Below, one piece after another: positions 353-42,600 of a stretch of DNA of 64,000 bases. Every line of letters begins with the position of its first letter. The stretch's first letter is position 1. Source of the DNA: Botryllus schlosseri (Eukaryota); NCBI GenBank assembly GCA_051294905.1, contig CM119379.1, forward strand, positions 10,664,001 to 10,728,000, read 5' to 3'. The translations under genes and the position numbers were made by a program. The notes beneath the pieces were generated by a model. That model was not told where the DNA came from and made no database searches. It saw nothing but the letters and a program-made list of their open reading frames with translations.

Positions 353-544
353 CCTACATCCAAATCAAGGGAATGACTAGTACATTGTGATGCCATGCAT
401 CTTCCCTGCATCACAATGGATAATCATGTCATGTCATCCACAGAAAAACTTTGCCCGCACCAATAACTTAGGGTCCTGGCTACACAGTAGACATATGGTG
501 ACAATGTTACACTAAGAAAAATCGATACGACCTCGTAAACATAC

Positions 545-688
545 CAAAAATATTATCTTGTCTCTTAATATTCTTTTTGTGCATTTTGTCCAGTTGTTTC
601 TTAGAAACCGTGACGCTCCACGCCTCGGGCTCGTCTTGTTTTATACTCAAATCGGGGTCCTGTTCGAGTTCCCCGAGTAGATCGACTG
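545..688 (-). CDS. AKAP13: RhoGEF exon: pre-DH linker and start of DH domain (AVDLLGELEQDPDLSIKQDEPEAWSVTVSKKQLDKMHKKNIKRQDNIF)
   Basis: Long T-tract acceptor ttttag at 689-690, donor G|gtatgt at 544; 144 nt, phase 1 to 1; Lbc-family EAWS...KRQD motif. Confidence 0.9.
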
Positions 689-6600: not shown

Positions 6601-9600
6601 AACAATAACGGCTAAGGATCAAGTAAACAGACCGGATATCATTGCATAACGCACATAGTTTTGGGATTGTCTCTATTGCCAGCTTGAAGACATTATTGAA
6701 AATCGATGGCCATTGGCCATGCGTCTTTTATTATCACCATCACAATTCGTATATGCATAAATACACCACAGGTCAGGATGTGGTTTTATCCTATGATTTA
6801 AACCTCGCGATGTTTATCGCCTCCTCGTCAGCTATTCACTGTGTCTTTTAAGTATGCCACGGAACGCGGGCCGTACTCGCTGTTCGAAAATTTCGAGCCG
6901 TTAGGTCGCGCCAGACACTAACGAGGTAATCGCGTTATGAATTATAGATTTCAGAAATCAGCTGATAGATCGAAAACATAGACCGATGACACGGGTCAGG
7001 AAATACTGCTTTTCTCGTGCGTTTTAACGCCATCAAGTCGGAATCGAAACTGGCGATAACGGAAGGGGAAGAAGCCTTCGACGCTTTACAATGTCAGCCT
7101 AAGATCAATATTCTTAAATAAGAAAAAGGTTGCTTCAAAGAGCAACAAAGGGCAGAGGGAAAGTAACAGGTAAACTACTGCCGACCCGATGAGTACAACG
7201 TAGACTACACACGGCTCCATACAAGCACAAAATCAGTTTCTCCTTACCTTGGGTTTATTTTTCACAGCCCGCCAGGAAAAATCTCTGGTCCCTTCTTTAT
7301 TTGCAGCTTCTTTATCTTTATTCTCGGTAAGATTATCTGCAAAGGAGATGAACACAGATTAGGTAAGGTCTCCAAAACGGAAGAGTCAGATATTCGAGCG
7401 ATATTCCTTAGCCAAGTACGGCGCTTCGAGCTCAACTAACAACCGGGCTAGTACGAAAAGACATGTTTCATCTGTAACTGCAGCTACCCGACTCTTGCAG
7501 TTCAAACTGTATTCACTCAGCTAACAACAGGCCATTTCCCTTCCAATACTACGGAATGCATTTTCGCACTGTACTAAATGTATGCACTGACGCGAGGTAT
7601 TCAAATTACGAAAACCGACAATGCTAATCACGGACACGCGTCACGACAAAAACATGCTGCAGTTACAGCTAGGCAAAATCAAGTACCACGGTTATTGATT
7701 TCAGATCGAGTATTAAGGTTGCGAGGTTTCTAGTATTACTGGCTGAGAGTATGGACGATGCGGAACTTCATATATGCAACGGCAATCAAAATATTTCCCC
7801 GTCTTCACCATATTATGGTACCGACATTACCTATTTCATTTCACTTGCAATAATAGTGCGGGTTGCTCACGACTTTACAGAAATTACGTTTAAACTAAAG
7901 TGCGTAAATCACTACTGAATGCTTTGAATGCTGTGATAGGACTAGTCAAGGGTTCCAAGACTTCCACGACGGGGAAAAGGTCGAAAATCCACCAACTCCT
8001 CAACTAGCAAACCTGACCTATGGCGACACTTTGAACTTCAATCTAAATATCGCAAGAAGCCATTTACCACACCCAGCAAACCGACACCACACTCTGCATC
8101 GAGACACGAAACTTTCGTAAAGCAACAGTTCCGCCGGCGGAAGGCGCGCGACGATAAACACGCATCGTCGGTTTCCGACTATATCAAGGCGGCTTTATTA
8201 TGCTCGGGGAGAGTAAATATCTTAGCCTCGGCTGCGTATGACTCATCGCAGCACTCGGCAAAGGTCTCCGAACGCGCACAGTCTGCGAATCGCGAGGCCT
8301 CCCGCACTAAACGCGACACAACGTCAACAAAAACCTGACATTCGCAAAGCAGCCGGCGCGTGTACGCACATCGCGCAGACGGTACAGCAAGTTTGACCTA
8401 TCTCAGCACATTCTAAATATCGAGTAATAATTCCAGGTCAACGCAGTAGACTGCGGTTGATGCACAATGCATCGTTTCTCTTACCTCATTATTAATATTA
8501 GCAATAAACGTTAAATGGCGGGTTATCCAGTATCCTTTGTCCCGTAAGAGTCGTCAATAGAAAGTGTGAACCAAAGCTATTTATATGCAACTGCTGAAAA
8601 GAGTATTCCATAATGAAGACACATGTTGACCTTTCGAGCAGCAATTAAATACACAACGTTCCATTTGTTTATAACGATACTGCGCGGGATCAAATTTATC
8701 TTGCGCATGGGCATATTCAAATGATTACAGTCGCCGGGTACACAAATCAGGCGACTATTTCTGACTCGACAGGCACCGTAATTACCTAGCCAGTAACTAG
8801 GTATGATGTTATTATAAATATAAGGGTAACAAAACGTGCGCGCGAGATATGGAAATGTAAAAATATCAGTCGGCGACGGTCGAAAATAAATTTTGAGTGC
8901 TCTTCATAATAGCCATTAACTATCATCCCTTCTAGTCTACGTTTTTAGATCAGTACAGTATGATATTATGTACATGTACATATTGTACAGTATGCTGCGA
9001 AATATTTACAAGCAAACAACCAGGATGCTGCTTTTCAAATCACCACGGTTGCTAAGGAGATCAGATATCTACTCTTCCTAGTAATCACCTTATTGCTCAA
9101 GTACAAACGAGATTAATTTTGAAACTGCCCCTAACGTAAGGACATTAGATGCATACTGTACCAGTTATGGTCAAACACAATTTTAATTGTCGATAGCGAC
9201 TATTCCATAGTTTTTACTACGTCTGAAAGTAAAGCAGAAAAGAAAAACATTGATTTTAAGATCAAAATGACTACACATAAATGTAAACACGATCAAAGCC
9301 TCAAAATCGAAAAAAAGCTAATATACGCGAAACAACGCCTGATTACTACGAAAAATTACAACGATCTACATCTCAACAGCGATCTATCAAGATCACAAAT
9401 ACCTCACCAACACTAATTGGCGTGCGAAGCGTATCAAAGTCATGCACGACACGCGACGCTCCCACATGAACTACACCCTTCTATATTCATACCGTCATTA
9501 CGCGCGCAATGCGGTAATTAAATAGATCTATCTGCCCCTCGGTACACGTAGCTGACTTTCGCGAGCGCTCGCTTTCACTACAATCTATCACGCGTTAGAA

Positions 9601-12600
9601 CCATAACCATTTACAGCATTATCGACGGCTGTCGCAATCTCATAGCTCGTACAGTACACCCGCATGGCGAAACGGCATTAATAAAGTCACAAGCTCGAGA
9701 CGCAGTCATAAAGAGCTTCCATAACAAAGATATCGCGTACGCCGTACGCTACGCGTCCTACCACCACAAGCGACCTCGGGGCGACAGGTGTCTCTCGCCG
9801 ACGATAGCGAGCGATATTTCGTCTCCTTTTTCTTATCGCCGCGCAATTTCTCTCAATGCCAATACCGACCGAAGTGACCTCAATATTTATATTTACCAAT
9901 TATATTCATATCACGTATGATTTGTCATAGTTACGAAAGGAAAAGTTTATGCGCATTTACAGCGAACTGTGAACCACACTATATTCAATATTCATATTCT
10001 GACACTGTTCTTATGTCGCTGAACAACGTAGGTGATAAAAGCTACTTGAATGTATTTCGTCATCCCACACATCACGTCCAAAAGGAAACGCTGCGGATGT
10101 AGCACCTTGGGTGCAAAAATAGTTCCGAGTAACATATCACAATCACCGAGCAACTGCTTATTGAATAACGAGAATTTCTGGCCGTTATTCAAAACGAATT
10201 TCTAATAAGTTCCAACGCCTACGGTTCTCAGATCAGGGTTCTGCTGATGCGTAGACCACCGCCGCACGTAAATAATACTAGAACGCTGTGATAAATCCGT
10301 CGCTAAGTAGGTCGCTGATACGTTTTACACGTGATTTAGAAAATTGACAATGCTGGTATAGGTCCGCAAAACAAACATTACCGCCGATTCATCAAGTTGT
10401 ATCGCCCGACGCGGATTTCAAAGTTTTTATGATCGCTCCCTATCGTTTTTCGTCTACTGTCCACTTTCAGAACGCTGACACACATTCCCGTTTTGAAACG
10501 GGGGAGCTTATCGGTTCCACCTTCTTCAACCGCAGTGATCACGCACCCACTGTATATTCGACAATGGAACTAGAGTCGCCACGTCATAGCACGGTAATGG
10601 CTTGGTGGCGTTGAAAAGCACGAAAAATACGAAAGGGACTTCAAAATGGGGTCGAATGCTTTGTAGTCGCGCACGTAGCCTGGAGTCGATTTGCGGTGTA
10701 CGAAAGCAACGAACCGCGGCAGCTATAATCAGATTTTTTTTAATGATTATATCGTCACCACGCAGAAAACTTGACACCGAAATTATTCCAGAGGCGGTCA
10801 AGGTCGGTAGGAAGTAGTTCTATTTCCGACGTGTACCCGAGAGTCAAGAGGTTATGATTTCAGGTTAATTTACTTCTTACCACCTTTCAGTACACTACTG
10901 TTTTGCTTGCACATGAATAGTAATGTTGCGACATAACTTGGGCCAACTATGAATTTTTCACGCATGCCACTAAGCTACAACTTCACGTTTATGCGATCTA
11001 CTACAGAAACGTTAGATATTACCAGGGTTGTAACTAAGTCACAAGGCTCCGAGTCACAAGTCAATCTCACTTTTATAGTTTTGACTCGAGTCAAGTCGAG
11101 TCATTTCAATTCACCACCGAGTCAAGTCCGAGTCCAAGTCAGCGAGCAGAGGTTCGAGTCCGAGTCATGGTATTATGACTCGAGTCCGAGTCCAAGTCAT
11201 TGTGTTCAGTTTCCAGTTAAAGTCTTGGTAAACCCACTTTTTATGACTATGTTTGGTGATATCGAATGGTTCGCATTTATAATATAACAATTTCCCTAAT
11301 TTTCAGCAGTTTCTGGTCGCATTTTCAAGTAACAGTACCAACAGACGAAATCCCAATGGTGTGTTGGCTTCGGAATTACAATGAAATGTCGGTATTGGCC
11401 GTCACAGTCTCGAGTCAATGACTTGGTTCGAGTCATGCGCAATGAATCGAGTCCAAGTCGAGTCAATACACAGATTGACTCGAGTCGAGTCGAGTCATTT
11501 TCGTATTTTGAAAAAATGACTCGAGTCAAGTCGAGTCATCAGAAAATCGTGACTCGAGTCGGACTCGAGTCGAGTCATGACTCGAGTTATTACAACCCTG
11601 GATATTACAGTGTTGTTATGGAATATGAAACACTAACGTCAATTGCCACGGTAATCTGTAAGTCAGGTTGTGTCACGCTCACGGACACATCAATTATTTC
11701 ATTACCGACACCCTTAAAACACCGATGGTCTAACGACATGCACTTGAAGAGCAACATAACACACGTTTCCGACAGCACGGAACATACCTCTACGTAGCGG
11801 ACACGCGACGCTAATGCGTCATCGGCTTACGTTTCTCGAAATCACGAGTCCGAGATGCATATCAATACGCCCAATTTCAAAATAGCGAGAATGAGCAATT
11901 GGGCGTTTCGAAACAGATCTAAATAGGTCGGGGCAAGTGCTTTTTATAATCGGCTGATTCACCAGTTCTTATCCTTGTCGTAGCGACGGGCGAGTAAATT
12001 TGTAGTGTAAAAATACGAAGATACAATACACCGAAAAAATATCTCTATCTCGACGAACCTTACTCATATCGCCTAGGGCACCGCTTGGATGAAAGAATCA
12101 ACGGTCCTAACAACGAGTGGGTGGCGCTGGCACTTGACGTAAACAATTTTAAATCACATTAATCCACTTCGATTAGCAGCCGCAGTACGCAAGAAACACG
12201 ATACGACTTGAGAGTTATCATCAGGGGAAAAGTCCGCGACGAATCAGATACAATTCCGCCCTGCCGCAACACAGACACCGCATCGAATTGGGGAAGATCA
12301 GTCGCTAACTATATCTTTAAAAAGAGTCAGCGATAATCTCGGAACTGTAACAAAACTAACAAGGCGACACAAGTCTGCGTGTTTCTGAGTATCGCGCAGG
12401 TTTCTAACTGCAGTAACCCGAAAAAAGTTACCGGGATACAAAATCTACTAACGTCGCCGGCGCGTTGCCTACAAACATTCCGGTGTTGATAATGACAACA
12501 ACCTCTCTGAGCGTGAATTTTAATCGATCTCAGCCCGGCTAAGTACGTTAAGCTGCACTCAAAGCCTACTTCGCGAGGCTGCTGATGCCAGCGTTCTTGA

Positions 12601-21600: not shown

Positions 21601-24600
21601 ACTATTACGAGAGATATGGTCATTGGTCTTAAGAACCGCGTGAAATGGTCCCTTCGTCACTGTAACTGCATTTATTTCCGACGTTTTCATCAATTGGCAG
21701 TGTGTTTTCATTTATCTATAACGCATCCCACAAGGAACTAAATTGTTGGAATTTAAAACAGGGAGCGAAATAGTGTGATTCTCGCTGACGCATAAAACAT
21801 AAGACCGGGCTTGGCCATAAGGATAAGAACGGGCTTGGCTTTGTAAACACAAACTTGGGGCTTTCAGTCGCGGATTTGTACATTATACTTATGAGCTCAA
21901 GTACAGAACTTGAACTTGAAAATATAATACCCACTAACCCATGGCAGACAACACACGAATTCATCGTTAGTAACAACACATTTATCTGCAATCAACCTAA
22001 AACCGTGAAAACATCCCACTTCGACGGAGTAACGCCCTATTACCACTACCATAATTACAGTGCAAATTACAGCAGACATCGCCATGAACCAGCATAATTC
22101 GACTCCATATTTTTCAAGCGCGCAAATTCCGTATCGCGGCCGAAATTTTTATGCCACTTACGACGCAGATAAACACGACACGAAAACTTGACAATAAGAC
22201 GTCACAACGACGGGGATAGCGCATTCCGAAACGCATCTCAACGCATGGAGAGCGTCTTGAAGTGAGAAGCAACATAATTTCGGTTTTCAAGTACGTAACG
22301 GAACACAATGCCCGAGTGGCCGACTGCGTTACCGCAATGGGCTAGGGATAGCAATCGGTCACCAACAACAAGATGAAAGTGCACTCGAAACATTCAACGT
22401 GCGGACAGAGGTCGCGGTAGAATCCGCCCACGTTGATATGCCGGTCATCGATTACATTACCGAGATTAATAGGAATTTTTCTCACGTTTACGCAAACAAT
22501 AGTGTTCCGTACCCTCCAAGGCGAAAATCATTGAAACACACCAATCCTTATTTATCATAGCCCATGGTGCTAGAGCCTTCTGGAGCGGTACACGAAAACA
22601 AGCCACGTCACCCCTTGTTATATATCTTCCATGAGAAGGGGCGTATTTACATCGTTTTTGAGAATGGGTGTGAGTGCGAAATTTTCATGAAATACCGTAG
22701 AACCGATTAATTTTACCCTATGCTATGGTGGAAATCCTCCAAATACACAATTGCCGTTTATAGTGTAGGGAGGTGGTTCTCAAACTTTCAAGACACGCCC
22801 CCTCAAGATAATGAAAAATTCCACGCCCCCTTATCGTCACATCACAAAATGCAACCAGAATGCTTGAGATCCCAACGTACAGTTTGATGGCATGGAAGGT
22901 TATGACTGTTGACGGGAGATTTCTCAGATATGAAATTACGGCAATACACAGAGTACTAACTATGAATTGGAGATAAATCGCGCAGAGTACGAAAATAATT
23001 TTCAGTTGGCCGCAGCTTCGCGCCCCCAGTTTGAGAATCACTGGTGTAGGGCATATATCGAGTCAACCGCACTTTCTAGCTGGCGAAAATGGGCTCTAGA
23101 GTGGTTTTACGCGTTCGTTCTTCAAGTGTAGGGGGCAATAGTCCACAGAAAACAGCTCCAAATGAATTGTAATGAGACGTCATATTGTAATTTTTTCATA
23201 TCAATCACAGCAATAGTATATTGATCCAGTAAAAACACTTGTGATTGTCGCAGTCTGCGACTCGCGGATATATATCTTACATAATACTATCGTTATTTCC
23301 CGCCAGGTCACAAGACACCGATCCTCAATCAATTCGGATGTATTTTCGATAGTCGAGACTGCGGCGATAGCAAATGACAGCCCCACGAACCGCAAGCGTG
23401 CGCCGTCTACACGAGGACATCGCCGGATCCTTTAGAATCAGAGACTATAAAGACTGACGCAGGAAGGTAAACCCGGTTTACGTGAGTGTATAATCATACG
23501 TTTGCGTTGCTTACGCGGATAATTCCCTTTCATTACATCGATTTGTAGACAATGGAGCGATACAGCGCATCGTTAAATACTTCCGGGAAAGTATCGAGTC
23601 CGTGCAGCCCCGAAAAAATTTCTCAGAAGCCCTCCCGACTTGCGAAGGGAGCTGCTAAACAACGCAACCCATGACGACCATTGATTTTGCAACATCTAGA
23701 CATGAAATTAGCCGCGTATTTATAAAGAATACAGCAGCGTAACCTACCAACAGCCTGAGACTTCTATTATCTATCGATCACGCTGGCCTGAAAGTGGCAC
23801 AAATTGTTTTTCATATCAGAAACACCGCCAATGCTAAGTATACAGAATATTTCCGCACATGGGAATTCGCTATGTAATACCACACTGGGCCCGAATTAAC
23901 ATAACAGACACGGAATTTACACAGTGGACAAAAATTGTGCAGCTCAATACGCAGTTTCGAGAATACGATAAGCGACCGTAATCGTGCCCAAGTAGAGTTC
24001 TCGGACGGTTGACAGGAATATGCTAAATCCACAGCAACGGATGTATCCGACACTAAAGTCGAAGCAAACACCGAAACACGTAATGAAACAGCAAATACTG
24101 TAGCAACTACATAACAAGCTACGAAAGCCGGAGCGTTCCTAGGTAAAGCCAGATATATCCGACGGAAATTCTCACAACCGCAATGAAGAGAAGAATACTA
24201 CCACGGATTAGTGACGACGGAATCGTCGATATCAACAGATAAGACGTAAGTTCATCCGGACAGTTCGAAACCAAGATTTCAAACCTGCGAAACCGATTAC
24301 GAACTGCGACTCACCAGCTCCCTCGCGCGAACACAAAACAACATACCCAGATTCGTAATTCTCCTATGCTTCGGCCTGGGCAGTGTCACGGCCTCTCGTC
24401 CTTCCCAAGTGACGAAGTCGTCTTTAAAATCCAAGCGATCGCCTTTATCCACGCTGTTGTGTCTAGGCTTCAGCGATTCGGTCGCTATTTCCTCAGGCGG
24501 GCCTACTGCCGGGTACAGGCTAGCCAGCGACGACGCGATAGACGATGCAAACTGGGAAGCTTCCTCAGAACATTGCGTCTGCGCTACACCGGTCCGTCTC

Positions 24601-27600
24601 GTGACTGCGTTCACAATGGTGGTGAGCAAACTTTCCTGCGATTTAGACCTTCGATTTTCTGCGATTTTCCCGCTGTGTTTTGGCAGTTTGCGATGCCGAG
24701 GCAGCGTCACGTTAGCCACTACCGACGGGGGTATGTAAAAATTATCATCTTCTTGACAGCAAGCGCCCGTCGATTCGTTATCCGCCGAATCGCTGTCCGA
24801 TATGGAGCATTGCGTGACTATAAGAGACACGGGGCTGCGCGGACGCGGTTGTAAACCATCATTGTGCTCTACAATCAGCCTATCGGGAGAGAGCGCAGTT
24901 CGAGAGCGACCGACCGCGTGGTTGTCCGTGAAAGCGCGCCTGCGATTTGATTGGCTAACGTCACAATCGTCGTCGCTCGACCGTTCAAAAGACGAATGAG
25001 AACAGTTCGAGGCCGAATGGTTGGATACGCGGTCTAACTGCGGCGAGCCGTTGGCTCCAGAGGCTAGTTTTCTAGCGCGTGCGAGCGCAGACAAGGCCGG
25101 CATCGATTCGGTGCCGCAAAAGGAGTGCAAAATCGGATGGCTGATGTCCGGCGATTCCGGCGATTTCGCGCCCTTTTTCTTGTACTTCCTCTGCTTCTTG
25201 TTGCTGCGAAAGCTTTCGAACAGTCCGCCCTTGGAGTCTGCCTTTCTGCGCGACAATTTCATTCCATTCCTCGCGTTGCTGTTGTTATTATACGCGCTCA
25301 GCGCTGTGTTCTCCTTCATAACCGGAAACGCACCGACGGCCAGAACGCTGTCCTTCACCACGTAGGCCCGTTCTACTTCCGATGGTAGCATCCTGCAAGT
25401 CAGTATCGCAGCCTCCTCGATAATCACGTCCTGCGGACTGGTTACCATCGCCACTTTGCGCTCCTTTTTTGACCGGATTCCGGTGAAAAATCCGGACATT
25501 GATGGTCGCCTGGGCACCTTCTTGTGTTCCATGGTCGCTGCGGTTGACATACTATCGCGGCACTTACGCGACAAGGCGCGTTCGTAAATAAATAGGTCGA
25601 TAACTGCTCAATGAATCGCATACAGCCGTGGTTAGCGAGTTGTCAATGAAGAAATCCGATTACAGAATCAATCAGAAATCCGATTACAGAATCAATCGCT
25701 ACGACTGATACGGTATTTCTACGTCATAGTATCTGGGCTTGCTCTGATTGGCCACGCGACACAAACTATCGAAACCAGTGGAGGAAAGCATATACACTAT
25801 AACGATAACTCTGTTGAATGAAGGGTACCTACAACCTGATATGGTGTCGGAAAATATTCGACAATGAACTAGTAATGCTCACGCTAATACGAAGTCCTGT
25901 CATTAAGATAATGTTAATGGATTTACAAATCGATAGACCGATGTATAGCACTTCGCAGTGTCGGGTCAGTAGATCATCTGCCACGTGGGATTTCGGCGAT
26001 TCGAGTATGTTGACGCGATTCGCATTCTACTATTTTTCAACGCGAAAATCAGTCTCTCATCAATCACATTAACTGAGCAACGTGGTTGAGAATTGACTCA
26101 TTGCGTAAAATACCAGTCGGGCCGAAGATAATCTGCACTAATACGCGGAATTAACGGGCGTTGATTAAAGATGAGTTGTGCGGATTTCTGATGACTATCG
26201 CGCCAATTGTGACTAGTTATGAATCACGCTCTAATCGACAGATAAATCAACGTAGATTGACAGAAATCGGCGCAGTTCCGTTGTATTGCAGGAGTTGGTT
26301 GAACCTTTTTTTGCTTATATAAATGTTCTATGAACTCACGAAATTCACCCGATACCGACCCATAAATGAGGACTGTTCACCAAACCACCGTGCTGTATAC
26401 TCTCAGGAGTCAACATTCATTTTTATTCAATCGCTGATGACTTAAAATGCAGATTTATCAGCAATTCCTGTTCCGATAGAGATAGGCTACAAGAGGTAAA
26501 AACGCATTCTGCTGGACCTCTCAGTAAACCGCACTGTTTTTATTTTACTCTTAAATCAGTATTCCGGATGTACTGCGGCCCTGAACGCCACCATCGACTG
26601 TAGTACACTTGTACAGCTCTGTCTTTAGAACGAGAATGCTTTCGCAACAGTTCACATCGCCAATGACGCAGAATTATGATCGACCGGTCGCTCACAGCCG
26701 CCCTACATTCTAACCCCGCGTTTTCGAGAGCCCCCAGAACAGTTGTTACGCGCTTTCGCGCTTCTTCAAATACTACACGTTACGGAATGTTATCACTCAT
26801 CCTTAACACAACAAATTTCCCCAGCATTGCAACGGAGGAGTCCTTGATCATTGTTGGACCTTCGAGAGCGCTGCCAGCTATGCACTTTCTTAACTCAACA
26901 AGCAACGAACGTGGCCAGATCAATACCAGCGATAATCTCCTTTGTCTGAAGGATCCCAGACAATTCTAACTGCCGGGAAGAGGTAACAGATAATTCAAAC
27001 GTTCCCTCGCTACAAATATTCCTACACACGGAGCCACGATTGCATTACCGACAATAATTATTCGCTTCAGCCTCCAAGGAAAAGCAACATCGATGCAAAC
27101 CGTGTACTGATGCGTATTTCGGAAATGATAAATTTGCGGCAATATCACAGCACGCGGCAAACTTCGTGTATTACGTCACGTCGAGTCTAGAACGTGGATT
27201 GGTCAGGAATACTTATGCCACAATACGTGATGTCCAAGCAATCTCGCATCCGGTTCGAAATACCCTTTCGAATCGTATCCTATTCGACTATGCCTTATGA
27301 CAGTGCATAAATCCCACATCTCTGACGCAAACTACCACCGTTTCGATAACGGATATAAGGTCAAATTCGTGGCGTGAGTGCAGGATCAGAAACGAAACGT
27401 TCCTACCTGGGTGGTACAAAACTATTATATTATTACGTTTGTATACTATGTCTTCCCAGAGATATATCCAACGAGAAAGCATATCAATTTACCAGAGAGA
27501 AATCCTCTTAGATAATGAAGGTTATACTAAAATAACATGCGAAGATCTACACGTAGCGCGATTCCGAAATAGACAGGTTTTCGCAAATAATTCGCTTAAA

Positions 27601-30600
27601 GTTACATCGCTCTCCGCTAATTGCGTTTAGCCTCATCGGACAGATATATACATGTTTCTCGTAACACGCTTGGGATTTTCAACCGCACAGTAATGAACTT
27701 CGCCGCCAACGAAATATGACAGGGAACTACTCGGGGAAGGGTATCTTTCGAAATATTACCTTGATACAGAAATTCACTATTCACTATTTTCAGTTATTAT
27801 CAATCGTGTCGCTAATACAGTGGCATTTTACTATTCAGATTGGACGTGAAAGCTATCACGAGCATGGAGCATGGATTGATTGATGGTGTAATCTCGACAT
27901 CAAATATGTGTACAAGGTTGAGAGATATTTTACGGACAGGCGACTGTTAGCGAGCGAATAATACGCATATTATAGCCAAATACTATTCACAATTAAATGC
28001 ATTGGGGTCACTGCATTGGAAATAACTTGACCGCTAACAAAACGCGACACTTACAAACTTACTAATCGCAGATTGGATACAGTATATAAGACCTGATTAC
28101 TTTTTAGCGGATAGTGATAAATGATGAATGATTACCAAGGCAAGCATAGTGGATAAGAGGTTTACGCGGCCGCTTCCAATGTGCCGGCAAAACTGGTCAT
28201 CGAGTCATCGACAGATACTAGGGATCGAAACATGGGCATCGAACTGTCCTAAGCGGAGTGATTCCACAAAGGGACTTTCCAATAATGATTCGATTACTTA
28301 CATCAACAAATATGCATGAATATACAAGAATCTACAAGAAAATAAAATTCCATATTGTTTCAACCTATCAGCGCCAATGAAGACTCGAAAACCACACAAA
28401 TCCGAAGCAAAACCAACCACTTAGCGAAAATATGTGTCAGACATGCGACTAACAGCGATACTCCGTCCCAATCAATACCAATCGCTTTTCGCATCCTGAT
28501 CAAGATCCGAATAAGGGGACAGTGCGACGCGGGTATGCATCATAACTGGGTTTTAGAAATTGGAAGTCAATGATAAAGCTACCCGAAGTGCATCAACATG
28601 GCAATTAATTTCATCAACTTGGCAACTACGGTTTGCAACGAATTTGAAAGACAAATCCGGGCGGGTAATTACAGATGGTAGGCTAGGTATACAGAAGAAT
28701 ATAAGTAGCTAAAGCGCGTTAATTAATGCCACAAATGGATTAGCAAATTTATACTGAAACTTCTTAAAAACTTGGATTTTTCGACAGCCAGTTGGCATTC
28801 CGAACACTATGTCACAAACCATTCGTAATACACTCATTTTTGAGATTGGCGTCAAAGGAACGTTTTCAAATTATCATCATTATCAACAAATCGATCTGAG
28901 GCGCTGGCCTGATATCGATCTACAATATTCGACCCCTACAAACGCCGCAAGCTTGCGATAGAGTGAAAATGTAGCAGGACCTCCAAACTACCAACAAATA
29001 ACCCTTTCCATAAGTCCAACAGTCGTAAACCACCGTCAACCCAGTATGGGTATTCCCCGGCTTAGTAAAATAATCAATAATATCCAATGACTAATACAGC
29101 GACGCAGGAGAAAATGGAGCTAACTCTCACCACAGTGAAATCTCATCTGTTACTAACAACTAGAAATTACAATATCTAAAACGCAGGTGAATTTTCCCGG
29201 CCCCAAGAAACATAGGCAGCGATCGTCAAGCCAAATAGCTTCACATTCCGAATTCGCACCGTGATAAAAAAAACGAAGCCCCATATCCTCGCGACGGTAG
29301 CTTGTAGCATAGGATTATTCACGGCTCATTTGCCCTTTATAATGTTTGTTTACGAGCGCACCGGCGGTCAAGTGGGTCCAGTCACATTTTCGGCTTACTT
29401 TACATTCAGCACAAAGGCCGCGCACATCCAGCATAGACAATTTGACAGATTTACGGTCGATCTACGATTATATTTAAAAGGTAATTGCTCCCGGCGATGC
29501 ATTGCGGCATTATGGCCGATGCAAAACCAACAGTTTCTCATAAAGCTCATAGATTGCGGCTATTGCTATGACGCGGTAGATGGTGCAAATTGGGGGAAAA
29601 CGCTGTGTTGTAGAAAAGTTACTGGAAACAAGAACCTTTTTCAGTAGTCGGGAAAATATCAACAATAAATACCTAATTCTGCGCTCGCGCTAAAACATTT
29701 CTGGCCAATCGTAATAGGACTCATGCCACCTCTCTGTTGCAACTTCTATTTAGATTAGCGTACACTGCTGAATAATATAAAGCCACGGTTTAAAATATGC
29801 GTATCAACACACCAATTCTTATGGAGATTTGTACCAGGGGAGTGGTGGGTTTGTTTCGTTTACCAGCCCACGAAATCCAAAAAGGTGCTACACGGCAAAC
29901 ATAACCTATACCGACCTTGGATATATCTCGATAAAAATTGGTGTGTTAACTGTCATTTGTACCCACTACAAGGGTGTGAGATTATACTTTCATACCTGGC
30001 AGAGCCGTTCACATGATTAGATCCCCACGTTGTGGTGGTAATCTGATAAATACACTTATTTTTCCACCCATGGATTTAGAGCGAGGCTATTCCGCAACGC
30101 TACATTCGCCACATACTCGGAGCGAGTGTGTTTTACTACCTTGACGCGCAGCTCAGCTGAACAAACGTCAGGCGGGGTCAGACCTTTACGACGAGAATTA
30201 AAAAAAGAATCGTGGCCGTTGACTCCTGAAGTACACAAGTAATCGAGCGACTGTGCCGGGCTATCCCACCGCAATTCCACATCAGGCTAACTGCGATATG
30301 ATCGTGCTTTGTGTATAAACTATTAAATAACACAGAAACGCCGAGAAATCAGCTAAAATCATTTGACACGCCTGCGCAATGCTTGCTAATCTACTCGCTA
30401 ATCATGAAAATGTCTTACGCCGACACAAAAACGGTACTGAAAATCACGATTTCGCAGATCAATACGCCGCGCTACCTGCCAAGGAAAGCACCAGTCGATC
30501 TATCTGCATATCTACAAGTCTCGGAAGGCTGACTGCCGATGAAAATGTGTTTTTCAGCCATAGTCAATTGTATGCTTCAAATGGCAGCCACGGGAACGAG

Positions 30601-33600
30601 AGAATATGGAGCGACAAGCAATATTTTACCTTGATCGATTAGCTCGTGAAGAAAATCGTATTAAGAACTTCGAATAGATCGACCTACACCAATAAGGAGA
30701 GATCAACGTACCGTTCCAGTGCCAAATATAATGCATTCTGTACGAAAACACATCGAAACCTGCATTACCATAAAGCAGTTTACAGACTGCGAAAGTTGCA
30801 TAACCTGCCCTACTGATCAGTTATCAAATATTGGGTAAAAATGCAAAGTTATTCAAAAACATGCTATAAACCATTTCTAGTATGGTTCTATTCTCTTAAA
30901 TTTGCATAACAAAGAGCTATATGATGTGTTAGCTGCATGCCACTATTATTTATGACACAATGGCTTGCAAGCAGGAAGTTCAACTACCCCTGCCAAGCAC
31001 GATCGTGCCCGAGCATTATGTAGAGAGATATCTTTATTAATTCTGTTGTTCAAATTTGAGATAGTTTCCCATTTAACGAGCGCTCAGGCGAGACCACCGA
31101 AAATTACATTTTCACATGGTCAATGGTCACCTTTTTCAGGCTATTGATTCTATTAGGTCGCAGAGAGTGAGTTTTTCTGTAATGTCTTGGGTGAAGTTTG
31201 CAGACCTAGGGGTTTGGGGTCTGTTATTTGACTTGTTTTAGGGGGGGGGGGGTATCGCTCTGCTGTTTGGCTTTTTTTGGGAAAATTATTACCGCATTGC
31301 GTAATTTTCTTGCTATGCGCCGGGAAATGGCAAATCAACAAATTTGACAGCTCAGCGGGAACTAAGTTAAACAATGGAACCTTTCGAGTATCTCATACTC
31401 TAATAATTCAATAAAATTGTGAATGCAACTTTTGTTAAAATTAAGTGCAACTTTCTCGCGATTTTAGTGCAACAAAAACTTGCCCTACTGATCAGTAATA
31501 CTAAAGCTGTTATGCGCGGAATCAAGAGCAAGATGTCTCGCTCATAGAAAGATAGCACGAATCACTCTGGACAATTCCAGCATTTTACGTCAACGTGGGA
31601 TGGCAATCGCTGCCCTGCTGTGTAATTCCGCGGTAGGCTACTACTGCCAATCAAGTAGTGTTAAGGAATACTTCGGTTACTAAAAACAGTCTACCAGCAT
31701 GAGTTGAATGACATTCGGTTGACAGTATTAGTATGAGCGGATTCGCCACAATGTAGCTCAAGACGCCAGTGTAATTGTTGGCGGATTTGCGTTCCTAATT
31801 CCAGACTTGAGCTCTCACCAAATTGCGATCAACATTACCATCATCATGTTACGGAATAAGAGCACTTCCAATATAGCAATTTTAAATTTTCAGTAACATA
31901 TGTGTACCTTCCCCCTTTAACCACAGAGCTTAACATATTCTTGATCCTTTCCAAGTCGTTAACATTGATGACGTGGGTAATACGTCACGGATGACCGCGA
32001 AGTTCGATTTTAACCATTAACAGTACGAGATCAAAGGCACACATGTCAAAGGGTCGCGACTGCAACAGTGCAACAGTCATGGAAACAGCTACGTACATCG
32101 ATCGCCCCCACCAATTTAACGATAAGAAATAATCTTAGACGCCATAATAAACTGCATGAATTCCAGGATGCAATCCAGGCTTACCACGTTTTGACCTCAA
32201 CTGACCTTGGTGATGGTTAAAGTCCTGAAAGTATAGGTTCCAGCACAGATTTGACATTTACAAGTCAAAAACCCAATAACACCTTTCACTGAATTTTCAG
32301 AGCTGGCTGAACATTTGGAAAACCAGTAAGCAATAAGCATCTGCCGGTGCCACCATCGGCGGAGTTCCGCTAAATCCCGACTCACGAGGGACAAAACACT
32401 TCAGCCGAAGTACGTTCTAAACTTGCGGCGCAGCGCCGCTTCCAACAAGCCCAAGGGCATTGTAGAATAGAAGTAGGCGTAAACCGTGTTGTTACCACAG
32501 ACCTAGTCGTGACAATATTACGCAATACGATGATAAACAAATGATACACAACTGTCTACAAATACATCCCTTGTGGAGACGGGGCACAACCAAGTTTTTA
32601 CGCGACGAACAGCTCGTTTTCACGCAAGAACTGAGCCAAGCACTTCGCCTCCGAAAAACCTACTCAAGTCGCATTCTTCACTAGCACAATCGAAGTTAAG
32701 CGACATAGACTATTGGCACTGCTTTACTGTTCTCTAGCGCAGATCATGCGTGGCAAAAAAAAGAGTAGCGCCAATTTTAAATGGCGTGCTGCCCGCGAAA
32801 TCGGTTTCTAATATAGCTAGTCTCGTGCGTGTGAGCGAAATTCAAGTGGGCTTAAGACAAGGGTCAAAGACACTGGAATACCCAAAATATGGATATGCAA
32901 ACTCTGCACATGAATTTTTTTGATAAATGGATTCAACTCCCCGAATAGAAATTATCCTCTTCGCGTGAGTTTCCTCCAGTTGTCCCGGATCGTTGTGTGT
33001 GTGTAATAAGATGTCGAACTTTATTGATTAGATTCGCTCTCGTTTTCATTAATGTAATCATTGGATGGTGGGTTTTATAACCTCAAATTCAACGCTTGCC
33101 CGTTAACGTTATATCCGGTAAAGTGTTCATACATTATGCGTGCCTCCTTGTTTATATTTTCTAGGCCAAGGTGGATGAAAGACCACAAGAAGTCATTTCG
33201 GCTACTGAACTAAAGGCTTTGTTCGGCCCTAGGTCCGGCTGCGCACGCCATATCCAGACAGCATGTCTATAAGGTTGAACACCACTGATTCAGTGCATTC
33301 AGTTTACGTGCTGGAAGACGCCACATAGCGTTCCACGCAATCACGCTATTCTCCGACGACACAGCGTCACGGCAGCATTTCATATCCGCATCGATTGCTA
33401 TAATAACAACCTTGCGCGGCGATTTCACTACGGACACATTGCAACGTACAGATTACGCACTCAACCTCTCGAAAGAAATCGGGTATAGAAGTACGGTCAA
33501 GAAAAATCAATACACCTTGACGCACTTGACGCGTTCGAGACGAGCAGACGCATAAATGATTCAGAGCACATCTGCCAATCAATCGCAGCATTTACAATCC

Positions 33601-36600: not shown

Positions 36601-39600
36601 ACTCTATTGTTCCAATCTTAGGCTACAATCTATAAATATAACAGCCCAGATCGAGTACCAAACAACGATTATAATACCATTGCAAGGTTAGCCAAAATGG
36701 AAGTGAAAAAATTGATTGACCAACCACACCACAATGCCAAGTTCGCGTAACAGTCGTACGCAGAAGGCTTATTCGCGAGAGGTAAGCACTAAGCATGGGT
36801 TTCAATTTGAAATGAGAGCTTGCGAAGTTGGATTACAATTAGGATTCAGGCATTGGGATTTGGGGCCTTTTTTAACTTCAGAAGTGGGCGAAAGTGATCC
36901 GCATCCCAAATTTCGCGGTTAGGCTACTCGGAATGTTTGGGTGCCATCAACTTTTGATCCCTGTCGGAGGCGACCTCTATAATACGAATGACCGGATGAA
37001 CAAGAAGACCTAATTTCGACGCAAGTACGGTTAGGCGAAACAGAGTACATGAGAGATTCGATTCTATCGAGCTTAGGCTTCTAGTCGAGTCGATAATTTG
37101 AGTATCACCTGTTATGACGTCATAAGAGTATGAGTGACGAGGGAAGTTCGAATATGTACCTTTTATTCGACCAAATATGAATACAAATCCAGTGCTGCAT
37201 CAAAATGATTTCACAGATATGCAATTTCCATCACCGTGCGTAGCTTTGTAGTAAGGTGCATGTTTCGTAAGCTGCGATAAGACTAATCGAGGTTTCATCG
37301 ATTCCACAATGGAAAATTGTATGGAAACTACGATCACCGTCAATAAATTAACTATTAGTGGTAATTGGCGTATAATTAAAGTACTCGCAATCGCAAGAAT
37401 CGTATCTCACTAGCACTGGTAACAAGGCGTTCTCGAATCGGAAGCTCCATTAAAACGACACCTACGGGAGTCCACGCCAACAACCCTGTCCCGTGACAAC
37501 ATAAGAACACAACACATTGAAAAGAACAAGCTTCCCGGAACAGCGGATACCCGTACCGTGAACCGTGATCGTAATAACGTCAAAATATCGCGTGATCGAA
37601 CAGGTAGCCAGAGCCTATTATCGCATATTTGGTGTCTCATAAACGACGAGCAACTCCAAGGATGGAAACGTATCGACTACCGATCACTAGCTGGCACGCC
37701 GCTACTGCAATGACGTCAAACCAGATCATATATCATACGCATTTAGTCTGCGCCGCTTAGATGAGGCGTTATTGGTTACTAAGAGTGGTTCCTAAGGTCA
37801 CGGGAGCGATCATGTCTCAACTGAAAGCTTATTACTGCAACATTGCGACCGCTGTCACTTTCATCAGCGTTTCCATTCATAAGAACAACAACATGATTGA
37901 CGCGCGTGCGTTTGTGCGACGTCGCGCTAGCTTTGTTTCTGTGGCAGATAATAAGCCTAGTATTTCTGTGAAGTCTGGGATGCATCGGCTTACGAAAAAC
38001 AAGTGTATCGGATCAGATCCTGTTATTATGGTATGATGTGACACGGAGAAACTGGCAAAAAAATTTAGAAGCTCATAAATCACTAGCGAAGCTGACAATT
38101 GTACAATGTAAGGTACATGCACTGCAGTGTGGGTACGACCAAGTTCCAATTGTCGGTGATGCTGATGCATAACCGCATTAATACGGCATGCGTAGTCAAA
38201 CATGCGTCTGAACATTGTCGTTGTAATTATATAATCATGATTACAATTATTGGTTGATGGTATGATTCCATTATATTAATAAGTTTGTCAAGGCGTGGGC
38301 ACAGGGCGTCGAGTTTTATCTTCAGATTAGTGGAACTGATCCGGAACGGATATGTCCCGGATTGAAATAACGGAGAAATGAAATTAGAAGGAGTGCTTCG
38401 TTAATTCAAATTCACTGAGAGTGAGAGGAATTGTATTTGTGCTTGCGAGTAGCGTGAAAGCTGTATTGCGAGAAACGCCGTGTCAGTTTCGTAATGGTAG
38501 CTTTACTGAAAAGCCGGCAATGCAGCTCGATTCGAAGTGATTTCATCCGAATTGCTTGTAGTGTTATATCAGTTGTAGCGTTTGACAATACTGCGCTTAA
38601 CCCCAAATCTTCGAAACGGTCGTCAGAAGTATGTTACGTAAATTGCTACATCTTGCAGAAATGGCGTACTTGGACTCATGAAAGGGATCTAGCACCCGCC
38701 TAATAACAACCAGCATACTGCAAGACACCAAAACAAGGACGCTTCGAAAACTACGACACTGTCGATTTCTCTGCTTACGTTTATAATCCCGACAGCCAAG
38801 GCAGATTTTTTTTGTTCGTAGACACAAAATGATACATAGATCTACTCATCTGCATGCAGCATGTAAATTAACCACACGATCAGTTTCGACACCTATCCAC
38901 GCGTTTTTCAGCATGAATCGTTGACGAATTTTAGCAACACCGTTGCAGACTTGTAAATGTTCGCAATCCACAGCATAAAACAAGTGTGCAACTAACCGAA
39001 AATTCTACAATAAGGAAAAAGCACGTTTTACTTGAAGAGTTAACGACGGTCCCTAATCCATTGTCGGATTACGAGCGAATGCGAACGGTGCAGATCAAAT
39101 CTGATAATATAGAAAAACACGAAAGAATCGCAAGCCCGTCTCTATCATGAGCAATACATGACGCACGCTTCAAATCGCAGCGAAAACGCGCGGATTTACA
39201 GAAACGAAACCGACAAATTGACTTCGCTCCAAAGCTGATATGATCAGGCAGCTGTAAATCTACCGCGAACAATAACTAATATCGGACACGCGAAAAAAAA
39301 ACTACCTGCGCTGTAAGTGCAACCCGCTATGGAGACCATCTGATAAAAATGCGATCGGCGTTATCGTTTCGCTAAAATTGGTACCGAAAGTACTCTCTCT
39401 GGAACATAATCGCCTGCACTCCGCGTAAGAGAGAAAATCTATCGCGCAATTTACCGCTATTTCCGAACAAACTCGTAACGTTGTCCCGAAAACATGCACC
39501 GAAGAAGCTTGTACTACCGTGACCCGGCGGCTTTCCAAATACAGCATGAAGATCGGAACAAGATGCCATAACAGGAATGTTTACACTGGCAACGTAGCGT

Positions 39601-42600
39601 ATTGATTCAACAAGTTCGAGAAACTGCCTAACTACATTTCGAAGTTACTTATATATCCACGCCACTGTCGCCACATATAAAACATCCGCTTATGAAATCA
39701 CACATAAATAACATGTACAACAGCTCCCTTCATCATCTCCAAACATACGTCGATGACTTAGCAAGCATAGCGCTGGCATTCCAAACATTAAACTATGGTA
39801 TAGTATCTTTCATTGCTCTCAAATTCAAAGCATAACTGCCTGAAAGAGCTCAACAAATCCGCCATGAGCACGCCCCAACTATCAGCGTACGTACGTAAAA
39901 CAGCCGTATAGACTATTATCATCACCCTACCATTCGGAAACTTCAATCGGCAATAATAACACCAAAACCTTACATTTCTATTCAAGACCGCTACCGCTCT
40001 GGTCACGCTACATTTGTTCGTCAGAAATAATATTACTTTACGCACGGGTGCCAACGATATCGGCCCGGCAATTATCGGACTGTTTTCAGAAAGGTGATCG
40101 CGTGAGGACAGCAATGCCGTGACTGTTGTTAACCGCAATGACGACAAGGGGACACTAGTTATAGCGAACACCCGCCTACAAAAGCCGGGTCGAAGCTTCA
40201 GTCACGATCAGGCATGGGGCAAGCGTGATTTGCGATTGTAATCGATTATATTTGGAAAAATGCAAAGTATTGGTAATTGTAGTCCTTTATTTTGCATATA
40301 TAACCAATTGCTTTGTAAAAAATCAACTACAAAACTCTTCAGTCTTACAAGGACTATAGCATAAACTGAAAAAGAAACAATGCGCTGTGGCAAGTTATTG
40401 ACGGTAGAAACGCCGGATTTGTGAACTTCATTGTTCATCGATGTATCGTTATTCATTACCATTATCATTATTCATCACTTCAAATATTAGCTGTGCTCAT
40501 TGCGCATTTAGGGCGCCGTTCCGAATCGTATTCATTGCACAAGCTGTCTTTTTATAATGGTGGCTTGAGATATCCTTATTATATAAACGAAATCGCGACT
40601 TATCGTGATTAAATGTCGATGCAATCATAACTGCAACGGATTACTGCGAAATTTGGTTGTAATTGTAATCGCGATCGCGCGATTTGAAGTAATCATAATC
40701 GATTACATTCAGGCAGAAAACGCAGATTCCACACGAAATCAGGTGCTATATACGCATCTCTCTCAGATCTTGGACAAAGAGAAAACTATTCCGATGCTAA
40801 TAACTTGAAAATTGCGGCGACAAACTCAAAGATAAACTGACAAATTGATATAAACTTCCCTATCCACCACATGCCTAGCTTGGTAAGTGTAGCGTTGAAC
40901 AACAGCGCCCGCTAACGGTGGCCGCATTTACACGAGTTCAGCTATTCTGCTATCCGACGAAGGCAGCCAGTCGAAACCGTTTGCCGAACCTGCATGTGAC
41001 GTCTAACGTCGACTGCCTTTCAAAGTAAGGGTAATGACTAGAGCGCATCTTAATTCTGTATGACTCTAAGCCTGCCTATAATGTTCTTCACGCGATTGCA
41101 GTACCAGTAGGCCCGCCACACCATAGAAGCGTTGAAAGAGCTTCTTACCTTCAACGGTCAGAGTCCTTCCGCCAGAAGCCCCATTCTTGGAGTCGCCCGG
41201 TTTCTTCACCTACACACAATTTAAACGGGAAGGGTTATTAATGACAAAATCCATGATCCAGATCGAGTACGGAAAGATTGCAACACGCTCAGAATGAGAT
41301 TAGCCAGGCAATGTCAACATATATTACCAGGCGGCCAGGAGTATCACTAACGACAAGAATCACGTAATGTCACGTAAACGGGCCTTCTATTTCGTAAGAA
41401 ACTCTGTGCGCAAAGGACACGCATTAGTTAATTTGGCATTAGAAATGTAATAACTATTACTATTATTATGAAAGCAATAAATTAATATGAAATATTAAAT
41501 AAGAAAATGAATGTTTCACTGAATAATAAGCTTCTTGGAGGTACAGAACTTCAATATACAATTGAATAGTATATTCATATTGAAATAAACCCGAATATTT
41601 TCGGCTGACACTCGTCAGGGGTTGCTGACAGTTGCTGACGATTACCCCTGACGAGTGTCAGCCGAAAATATTCGGGTTTATTTCCATATGAATATACTAT
41701 TCAATTGTATATTGAATAATAAGCGTGAATTGCGATTATAGGGCACTTGGCGAATTCGGCACTCGGTATGTATGTGAATGATAGTGTATTCGGTTTAAGT
41801 GTGAGTGTTAAGGGTTATGGTAAGGGTAGGTTAGGATTAGGAGTCACCTAGTTCCGAATTAAATATGCCGTATTCACCGGTAAGTGGTAAACCATACAGC
41901 AATATCACGTAGGGTTAAGACAGGGCCGGCCAACCCGTGGCCCGCGAGATGGTTTTGAGTGGCCCGCGAGGTAATTTCCGAAATTTCTAATATCATCAAA
42001 CATGGATCGCACAAATTGTGAACTTGCAAGGCCAACCAAAAATTTTATTAGTCTGGTCGCAACACTTGAGATGCGATGAATAAAATATCAGTTTCGACTC
42101 ATTGACAGATCCATCAACCATTCACATATTGGTAGCCTATATCTTCGTACACTACAATACAGCAGAATAATTTGCGATAGATTTATCAAAGGTAAAAAAT
42201 TTCTACAAGCTTAGCGCAATATGTTGTCACTCGATTTCTTGTTTTTAAAATTGTTGCCCTTTTGTGAAAATTGAAGAACACCCAATGTATCAGATTGAGT
42301 CTAACTATATTCGCGATTACGAGACAAAGTGTCGTTCAACATATGCGACCTTGCGTTTGCGCTCGCAGTAAGACCGTCGACTATGAAACCTAGGCACGAA
42401 ATGATTAACGCATGTTGATCGCAGCTTTCGATATCGATATGTCCATGTGCCGAATAGCCCAGCCCTCGCAAACTTATCCTAACGATATACAGCAGGCCCG
42501 CAACATAGTCAAGTGGCAATATTATTGACCCATGAACTTTAAAAAATTTTCGCGCTTGGCGCAGATGGTGGCCCGCGCAAAAATTCGTCAATCGAATGTG

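What the first reader, a model, noticed from the sequence alone, without database searches (positions are those of the whole stretch)
7337..41148. Possible variable-first-exon array: one constant acceptor fed by several phase-1 starts along a 34-kb intron
Seen: the 7336 exon needs a phase-1 donor. Besides the mainline exon at 41149, ATG-to-donor units in phase 1 occur at 32257-32185 (G|gtaagc), 29146-29131 (MRFHC, G|gtgaga), 27482-27407 (MLSRWIYLWEDIV..., G|gtagga), 25550-24347 (401 codons, G|gtatgt) and 10914-10881 (G|gtaaga), with weaker ones at 15504-15489 and 12067-12064. About half of the strong G|GT donors I noticed by eye fit phase 1 with an open ATG frame; others (e.g. 20528, 8483) do not. 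The intron is CpG-rich and has fewer MITEs than 42-62 kb. Inference: a promoter-switching system that puts interchangeable N-termini on one RhoGEF core, conceptually like the protocadherin or UGT1 variable exons. The short candidates could each be chance matches.
Basis: partly seen in the sequence, partly recalled or inferred. Interest (0 to 1): 0.7.

Follow-up and report, generated by a model that had tools for sequence, protein, structure and literature searches.

The report
Two-start RhoGEF gene, not an array
In a sea-squirt Rho-activator gene, one conserved 401-codon exon inside a 34-kb intron is a real alternative start spliced onto the shared exon, but the other proposed mini-starts occur no more often than chance predicts, so this looks like an ordinary gene with two starts, not a protocadherin-like array.

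Summary
As a set they are not unusual. ATG-open, phase-1 donor units number 7 of 16 strong minus-strand donors, against 4.9 +/- 2.3 in 150 dinucleotide shuffles (P about 0.24). The other phases and the plus strand give similar counts.

One unit is real. Exon 25550-24347 is single-copy. It is conserved from its ATG to the G|GT phase-1 donor in seven ORFs from other ascidians. A contig of run X1 runs from 24347 straight into the first 11-12 bases of exon 7336.

The two short candidates inside the one stretch I could lay reads on (27482-27407 and 29146-29131) have no coverage and no loose end, though depth was low.

The constant part is an Lbc-type RhoGEF (DH + PH_16; nearest solved relatives ARHGEF28, ARHGEF18, AKAP13, ARHGEF2).

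The upstream exon ending at 41149 fits by phase with its neighbours, but I could not test it with reads.

Verdict: alternative first exons, probably two, as is common in this RhoGEF family. The array idea is not supported. Interest is low.

The parts
7248..7336 (-). Shared ('constant') exon, 89 nt. Strong acceptor ttgcag| before 7336 and donor AAG|gtaagg after 7248. It enters in phase 1 and leaves in phase 0.
   Evidence: Sequence and the only open frame. The frame is conserved in sister contig L011:1038-1136. Its first 11-12 bases follow 24347 in a run X1 contig, and that word is unique in 124 kb.
24347..25550 (-). Alternative first coding exon: 401 codons plus one base. Conserved ATG at 25550 and conserved phase-1 donor G|gtatgt after 24347. 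It encodes a Ser/Arg-rich region with no known domain.
   Evidence: Seven ascidian ORFs at 30-57% identity align from the ATG and diverge right after ..N[LVI]G, which is G|GT. Single copy in the genome. No Pfam family. Contigs of X1 and X2 and all 3 reads of X16 lie on it. The junction to 7336 is seen in X1.
25551..25705 (-). 5' leader of the 401-codon exon (minimum extent). In-frame stop at 25610-25608. The 24-nt tandem duplication at 25697-25650 is polymorphic.
   Evidence: A contig of run X2 covers 25301-25673 and runs on with 8 letters that match 25705-25698, as if one repeat unit were missing. Upstream stop. Whether X2 is RNA is the tool's guess.
25721..25751 (-). Putative core-promoter motifs: GGCCAATCAG (CCAAT at 25751-25747) and TGACGT (25726-25721), 201 and 176 nt before the ATG.
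   Evidence: Motif search. Inference only. The sister contig L001 has inverted CCAAT at -278 and -245, but the flanks do not align.
41149..41209 (-). Upstream exon of the presumed long isoform, 61 nt. Acceptor tgtgtag|, donor AAG|gtaaga (score 7.0), phase 0 to phase 1.
   Evidence: Sequence. Its phases chain with 43220-43046 and 50450-50299. Its junction to 7336 was not tested with reads.
43046..43220 (-). Presumed upstream exon (proline-rich), phase 2 to phase 0.
   Evidence: Open frame and splice sites read from the sequence. No homologue found.
50299..50450 (-). Presumed upstream exon (acidic, serine-rich), phase 0 to phase 2.
   Evidence: Open frame and splice sites read from the sequence.
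4991..5257 (-). Next conserved coding exon after 7248. The start at 5257 is the only phase-0 acceptor (GAG|GA) shared with the sister species. The acceptor at 5397/5396 does not fit the phase.
   Evidence: 57% identity to P0009 and L011:2592-2933. Phase reasoning. The boundary is not confirmed by RNA.
544..689 (-). First DH-domain exon of the RhoGEF core. The rest of DH, PH_16 and the coiled coil lie below window position 1 (L004, L005).
   Evidence: Pfam RhoGEF and PH_16 on the following exons. PDB relatives ARHGEF28, ARHGEF18, AKAP13 and ARHGEF2. Exon order conserved in L011.
32185..32257 (-). Short ATG-to-donor unit (24 codons): judged a chance match.
   Evidence: Exists. Single copy. No enrichment of such units. 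Not covered by the read test.
27407..27482 (-). Short ATG-to-donor unit (25 codons): judged a chance match.
   Evidence: Exists. Single copy. No coverage and no loose end at 27407 in four runs, at low depth.
29131..29146 (-). Short ATG-to-donor unit (5 codons): judged a chance match.
   Evidence: Exists. No coverage of the unit and no loose end at 29131.
10881..10914 (-). Short ATG-to-donor unit (11 codons): judged a chance match.
   Evidence: Exists. Single copy. About 100 nt from a young MITE at 11014-11609. Not covered by the read test.

Best explanation
This is a sea-squirt Lbc-type RhoGEF gene on the minus strand with alternative 5' ends, most likely two.

The long form comes from exons above 41 kb. 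Its last upstream exon (41209-41149) is joined across the 34-kb intron to exon 7336-7248.

The short form starts inside that intron, about 150-200 nt upstream of the ATG at 25550. It reads a 401-codon first exon and is spliced from the phase-1 donor at 24347 to the same acceptor at 7336. This puts a lineage-specific, probably disordered and phosphorylation-rich N-terminus in place of the long one, on the same DH-PH-coiled-coil body.

Shown: the exon's conservation and boundaries, the 24347-to-7336 junction, and the identity of the core.

Inferred: an internal promoter (CCAAT and CRE-like motifs), the 41149-to-7336 junction, and what the N-terminus does.

The short ATG-to-GT units elsewhere in the intron are chance matches.
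For: - Coordinates and phases of all units check out.
- There is no excess of phase-1 ATG units over shuffles, other phases or the other strand.
- The 401-codon exon has homologues in seven ORFs from other ascidians, one of them Styela clava XP_039272338. Identity runs from the ATG and stops at the G of G|GT.
- Sister contigs have an in-frame stop 9 and 5 codons before the ATG and no acceptor in between, so it is a first coding exon, not a cassette.
- A contig of run X1 ends its match at 24347 and runs on with ATAATCTTACC(G), then an adapter-like tail that also caps another contig. That word occurs once in 124 kb, at 7336 on the minus strand.
- All 3 reads of RNA run X16 in the 6-kb stretch fall on the exon.
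- The exon is single-copy.
- Exons after 7336 are conserved in the same order in the sister contig L011 and lead into DH and PH_16.
- Phases chain 50299 -> 43220, 43046 -> 41209 and 41149 -> 7336.
Against:
- No TSS data exist. The leader contig comes from a run that only may be RNA, and that run also covers intron pieces.
- The junction rests on one low-depth (5.6x), partly chimeric contig and 11-12 bases.
- Depth in the raw-read runs was very low (3 and 0 reads). The lack of signal at 27407 and 29131 is therefore weak, and five candidates (32185, 15489, 12064, 10881 and non-coding first exons in general) were not tested with reads at all.
- Phases upstream of 50450 do not chain with the strongest sites, so the long form's 5' part is unresolved.
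Confidence: 0.68

Rival explanations
1. Variable-first-exon array, the first reader's idea: several of the short phase-1 units, each with its own promoter, are used in different tissues or stages and give many N-termini on one core.
For: All units exist with the right phase. Phase-1 units are nominally the most frequent class on the minus strand (7 against 4 and 3 at score 4 or more). The intron is CpG-rich and repeat-poor. Most candidates were not tested with reads.
Against: The excess is within shuffle noise (P about 0.24). About a quarter of all donors in any phase have an open ATG by chance. The units share no similarity with each other or with the 401-codon exon. Their peptides of 1-25 residues look random. 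There is no coverage or donor-end signal at 27407 or 29131. CpG enrichment is spread over the whole intron without peaks at the candidates.
Confidence: 0.04
2. Single start: the RhoGEF gene begins at the 401-codon exon. The exons above 41 kb, including 41209-41149, belong to a separate upstream gene or are not exons, so 7336 has only one partner.
For: Only the 24347-to-7336 junction was seen. No homologue was found for the 43-kb exon. The ankyrin-like piece at 60.7 kb is below Pfam threshold, and ankyrin repeats are not typical of Lbc-type GEFs (the latter is my own knowledge). CpG observed/expected drops above 42 kb.
Against: Exon 41209-41149 has a strong acceptor and the strongest donor in the region (score 7.0). 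It is open and ends in exactly the phase that 7336 needs. Its phases chain with two upstream exons. An internal exon must be spliced to something downstream, and no other partner is evident.
Confidence: 0.13
3. Same two mRNA forms, but the short one is made by spliced-leader trans-splicing onto an acceptor upstream of 25550 in the long pre-mRNA, not from an internal promoter.
For: About half of expressed genes in the ascidian Ciona receive a spliced leader (PMC1488885). AG sites preceded by pyrimidines lie at 25563 and 25552, just before the ATG. No TSS evidence is available.
Against: A contig of run X2 runs without a break from the exon through those AGs to about 25705, though that run may hold DNA or pre-mRNA. 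CCAAT and CRE-like motifs sit 176-201 nt before the ATG. No spliced-leader sequence was seen.
Confidence: 0.1
4. Nested independent gene: the 401-codon ORF is a separate gene inside the intron, as its homologue is annotated in Styela clava (LOC120346637), and is not part of the RhoGEF.
For: RefSeq lists a 336-aa 'uncharacterized protein' for the homologue.
Against: Conservation ends at a phase-1 G|GT in all five ORFs that reach that point, not at a stop. The X1 contig continues into exon 7336 in frame. The Styela model lacks the conserved C-terminal third, so it is probably a fragment.
Confidence: 0.03

Closest known systems
Alternative-promoter or alternative-first-exon isoforms of vertebrate Lbc-family RhoGEFs (AKAP13: AKAP-Lbc, Brx, proto-Lbc; ARHGEF18: p114RhoGEF and LOCGEF forms; ARHGEF2). 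From my own knowledge; my paper searches found no usable source.
   Same: Same protein family by DH and PH_16. One catalytic core receives different N-terminal regions through different 5' exons joined to a common downstream exon.
   Different: The 401-residue N-terminus here has no detectable relative outside ascidians. No C1 zinc finger was seen between it and the DH domain.
Clustered protocadherin and UGT1A variable-exon arrays
   Same: A 5' exon chosen upstream is spliced to one constant acceptor.
   Different: Those arrays are tandem paralogous exons, each large, coding a homologous domain and carrying its own promoter, and they are conserved as arrays. Here the candidates are unrelated to each other, mostly 1-25 codons long, at chance frequency, and only one is conserved.
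ECT2-like RhoGEF elsewhere in this genome, with two alternative first exons conserved across ascidians (earlier scan note s1-300868; not checked here)
   Same: Another RhoGEF of the same sea squirt in which alternative first exons swap the N-terminus.
   Different: Different RhoGEF family and a different kind of N-terminus (membrane anchors there, a disordered Ser/Arg-rich region here).

Membership tests
Variable-first-exon array (protocadherin / UGT1A type) | Three or more alternative 5' exons, each joined to the same constant acceptor | tested here: inconclusive
   One junction was seen (24347 to 7336). 41149 to 7336 is inferred from phase. There is no signal at 27407 or 29131, but depth was low.
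Variable-first-exon array (protocadherin / UGT1A type) | Variable exons are tandem paralogues of one another | tested here: not met
   None of the candidate units overlaps any intra-window repeat. The 401-codon exon has a single match in the whole genome. Three short candidates are single-copy.
Variable-first-exon array (protocadherin / UGT1A type) | Candidate units more frequent than chance, or conserved in relatives | tested here: not met
   No enrichment over 150 shuffles, other phases or the other strand. Only the 401-codon exon has homologues.
Variable-first-exon array (protocadherin / UGT1A type) | Each variable exon has its own promoter or TSS | not testable with these tools
   No CAGE or TSS data. 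The raw-read runs gave 3 and 0 reads on the stretch.
Gene with alternative first exons (two 5' ends) | An intronic exon with its own start codon, joined to the common downstream exon | tested here: met
   Conserved ATG with upstream in-frame stops in three species. Conserved phase-1 donor. Junction contig.
Gene with alternative first exons (two 5' ends) | The upstream exon set is joined to the same downstream exon, skipping the intronic first exon | not tested
   Supported only by splice-site strength and phase chaining.
Lbc-type RhoGEF (ARHGEF2/18/28, AKAP13) | DH (RhoGEF) domain | tested here: met
   PF00621 matched on two exon pieces above the gathering score. Best PDB matches are AKAP13 and ARHGEF2.
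Lbc-type RhoGEF (ARHGEF2/18/28, AKAP13) | PH domain of the PH_16 type following DH | tested here: met
   PF17838, E = 5e-17. PDB matches: ARHGEF28 3e-19, ARHGEF18, AKAP13, ARHGEF2.
Lbc-type RhoGEF (ARHGEF2/18/28, AKAP13) | C1 zinc finger before DH and coiled coil after PH | tested here: inconclusive
   No C1 match on the exon pieces scanned, but small exons were not all scanned. Charged, heptad-like ORF pieces follow the PH domain, but no coiled-coil prediction was run.

The most novel reading that the evidence does not exclude
Some of the short phase-1 units, or non-coding first exons that the ATG/phase filter cannot see, are used in particular tissues or stages. The CpG-rich, repeat-poor 34-kb intron would then be a multi-promoter landscape feeding acceptor 7336 with more than two 5' ends.
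Probability: 0.05. Interest if true: 0.55.

Novelty: new member of a known kind. Interest (0 to 1): 0.2.

Why it matters
If the two-start reading holds, annotation of this gene and of its Styela clava homologue should merge the 'uncharacterized' 401-residue ORF with the RhoGEF. That gives a defined, ascidian-specific N-terminal module whose effect on a RhoA-type exchange factor can be tested, for example on localisation, 14-3-3 binding or kinase control. It also illustrates a general point for the scan. ATG-open, phase-matched donor units arise at about 25% of donors by chance, while the true donor here is a weak one. Conservation and junction reads, not donor strength, decide the question.

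Tried and rejected
1. Cassette-exon reading of the 401-codon exon. The window has two AGs (exon start 25606 or 25603) that would accept phase 1 in frame. Sister contigs have in-frame stops 9 and 5 codons before the ATG and no such AG. Rejected.
2. Alternative strong donor at 24315 (CTG|gtgagt, score 6.2, phase 0). Conservation stops 32 nt earlier, at 24347, and the contig breaks at 24347. Rejected.
3. Promoter conservation by DNA alignment. Only the exon aligns between the window and L001-L003. Uninformative.
4. CpG islands as promoter marks. Enrichment is diffuse, with no peak at the candidates.
5. Are the short candidates derived from repeats? No, they are single-copy. Uninformative.
6. Homologues of the 43-kb exon, to anchor the long form: none found.
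7. Pfam on the other long ORFs of the intron: nothing.
8. ESM Atlas search for the 401-residue region: no credible relative.
9. Rfam over the whole window and over the conserved element at 6.5 kb: nothing.
10. Literature searches for isoforms of ARHGEF18 and AKAP13 gave no usable source, and one hit is a retracted paper.
11. The acceptor at 5397/5396 for the next exon does not fit phase 0. A conserved GAG| acceptor at 5258 does.
12. Run X20 laid no read at all, so it is no test.
Full report
**Where and what.** The window is G000:C9:10664001-10728000 of a 495-Mb genome. The only named homologue of the key exon is from the ascidian Styela clava, and an earlier scan note calls the genome a sea squirt. 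The gene lies on the minus strand. Exon 7336-7248 follows a strong acceptor (ttgcag|). Only one of its frames is open, and that frame needs one base from the preceding exon, so the acceptor is phase 1.

**The shared body is a RhoGEF.** A 9.3-kb contig from a related species (L011) carries the same exon in the same frame. It is followed in the same order by the exons at about 5.2 kb, 2.5 kb, 2.1 kb, 1.6 kb, 0.78 kb and 0.6 kb, and then by the exons below window position 1. Those last exons match Pfam RhoGEF and PH_16. Their nearest solved relatives are ARHGEF28, ARHGEF18, AKAP13 and ARHGEF2.

**Checking the observation.** Each starts with ATG, is open, has length 3n+1 and ends before GT at the stated coordinates.

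Whether that is more than chance is a separate question. I scored all minus-strand GT sites in 7337-41148 with an approximate donor matrix whose frequencies come from memory. For each site and phase I asked whether an ATG lies upstream before any stop.

- At score 4 or more, 16 donors were found. Of these, 4, 7 and 3 have such an ATG in phases 0, 1 and 2.
- 150 dinucleotide-preserving shuffles give 18.7 donors, with 5.7, 4.9 and 5.3 such units. 24% of shuffles reach 7 in phase 1.
- The plus strand gives 7, 4 and 1.
- At looser thresholds every phase sits at 24-28%, which is what one ATG per three stop codons predicts.

The impression that about half of the strong donors fit is within noise. 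The one donor that proves to be real scores only 1.4. CpG observed/expected is 1.31 in the intron against 0.92 at 42-62 kb, but it is diffuse and has no peaks at the candidates. Intra-window repeats cover 2.3% of the intron against 7.4%.

**The one real unit.** ORF 25550-24347 has homologues in seven ORFs from other ascidian assemblies at 30-57% identity. One of them is Styela clava XP_039272338.

- In the alignment, similarity begins at the initiator Met (MST..EHKK..RR.S.SG.F).
- Similarity runs to ..TWEGRE..TLPRP.HR.I.N[LVI]G and then vanishes in all five ORFs that reach that point.
- That final G is the G of G|GT, so both the donor and its phase 1 are conserved. These homologues are genomic ORFs that read on into the intron.
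- In two related species an in-frame stop lies 9 and 5 codons before the ATG with no acceptor in between, so this is a first coding exon and not a cassette.
- The window does have two AGs that could accept phase 1, but they are not conserved.
- The exon is single-copy in the genome. It has no Pfam family and no credible relative in the ESM Atlas.

**RNA evidence.** Only one read-laying run of 6 kb was allowed. I spent it on 24000-29999, which holds the long exon and two short candidates.

- A contig of run X1 matches 24466 down to 24347 and then continues with ATAATCTTACC(G). After that comes an adapter-like tail (GCTCAAACAC) that also caps another contig of the same run.
- That 11-12-base word occurs once in the 124 kb I assembled around the window, at 7336-7325 on the minus strand, which is the start of the shared exon.
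- The join keeps the frame (..N L | D N L T E..).
- The contig is low-depth and partly chimeric. Even so, a break exactly at the conserved donor followed by the exact start of the phase-matched exon is very unlikely to be an accident.
- All three reads of RNA run X16 in the stretch lie on the exon.
- Contigs of run X2, a divergent haplotype, cover 24711-25673 and run on to about 25705.
- No run covers 27482-27407 or 29146-29131, and no loose end sits at 27407 or 29131. Depth is too low for that to be more than weak negative evidence. Run X20 laid nothing.

**The upstream partner.** Exon 41209-41149 has a strong acceptor and the best donor in the region (score 7.0), and it ends in phase 1. Using the strongest sites, phases chain as follows: 50450-50299 (phase 0 to 2), then 43220-43046 (2 to 0), then 41209-41149 (0 to 1), then 7336. 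No homologue was found for the 43-kb exon. Phases further upstream do not chain. A single-start gene therefore remains a live rival, at about 0.13.

**How it most likely works.** There are two 5' ends.

- The long form is transcribed from above 50 kb and skips the intronic exon.
- The short form starts roughly 150-200 nt upstream of the ATG at 25550. GGCCAATCAG lies at -201 and TGACGT at -176. This form splices 24347 to 7336.
- The result is one DH-PH-coiled-coil core with either a long N-terminus or a 401-residue Ser/Arg-rich region carrying RRxS-type motifs. That region is probably a regulatory or localisation module.
- The internal promoter is an inference. About half of expressed Ciona genes receive a spliced leader (PMC1488885), so trans-splicing onto the long pre-mRNA is a possible alternative route to the same mRNA.

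**Comparison with known systems.** The arrangement works like the alternative-promoter isoforms known for vertebrate Lbc-family GEFs (my own knowledge; no usable paper was found). It does not meet the defining features of a protocadherin- or UGT1A-type array. The candidate exons are not paralogues, they are not enriched, and only one is conserved.

**Verdict.** This is a new member of a known kind, of low interest. About 5% probability remains that further 5' exons, possibly non-coding ones, feed 7336.

Noticed in passing
window 6481-6569 (minus strand), matched to L011:2172-2260: A conserved non-coding element lies in the intron after exon 7336-7248. About 45 nt are almost identical to the sister species, while the rest of the introns do not align. 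It has stops in all three frames, contains AATAAA and a GGAA (ETS-like) core, and has no Rfam match. It could be an enhancer, an intronic poly(A) site or a poison exon.
   Followed up: partly
window 11014-11609: A young MITE-like element of about 590 bp with internal inverted matches. At least 40 copies at 93-96% identity occur across the genome.
   Followed up: partly
window 30821-31497: An older dispersed repeat, with at least 40 copies at 77-83% identity.
   Followed up: no
window 25650-25697: A 24-nt tandem duplication in the leader of the 401-codon exon. The haplotype in run X2 appears to carry only one unit.
   Followed up: partly
L007/L008, window coordinates -27163..-28656 and -31890..-33572 (minus strand): Two near-identical reverse-transcriptase-like ORFs (498 and 561 aa), with a tail reminiscent of a GIY-YIG nuclease (my impression: Penelope-like), lie beyond the RhoGEF gene's last recognisable exons.
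   Followed up: no
Styela clava XP_039272338.1 (P0002): RefSeq annotates the homologue of the 401-codon exon as a separate 336-aa 'uncharacterized protein LOC120346637'. The model lacks the conserved C-terminal third and is probably a fragment of that species' RhoGEF gene.
   Followed up: partly
window 4991-5396 and 759-2543 (minus strand): The obvious acceptor at 5397/5396 does not fit the phase left by 7248, whereas a GAG| acceptor at 5258 conserved in the sister species does. Small conserved exons lie near 2543-2487, 2165-2109, 1626-1558 and 797-759.
   Followed up: partly
window 24315: A much stronger donor (CTG|gtgagt) lies 32 nt beyond the real, weak donor at 24347. It would give phase 0 and appears unused.
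   Followed up: yes
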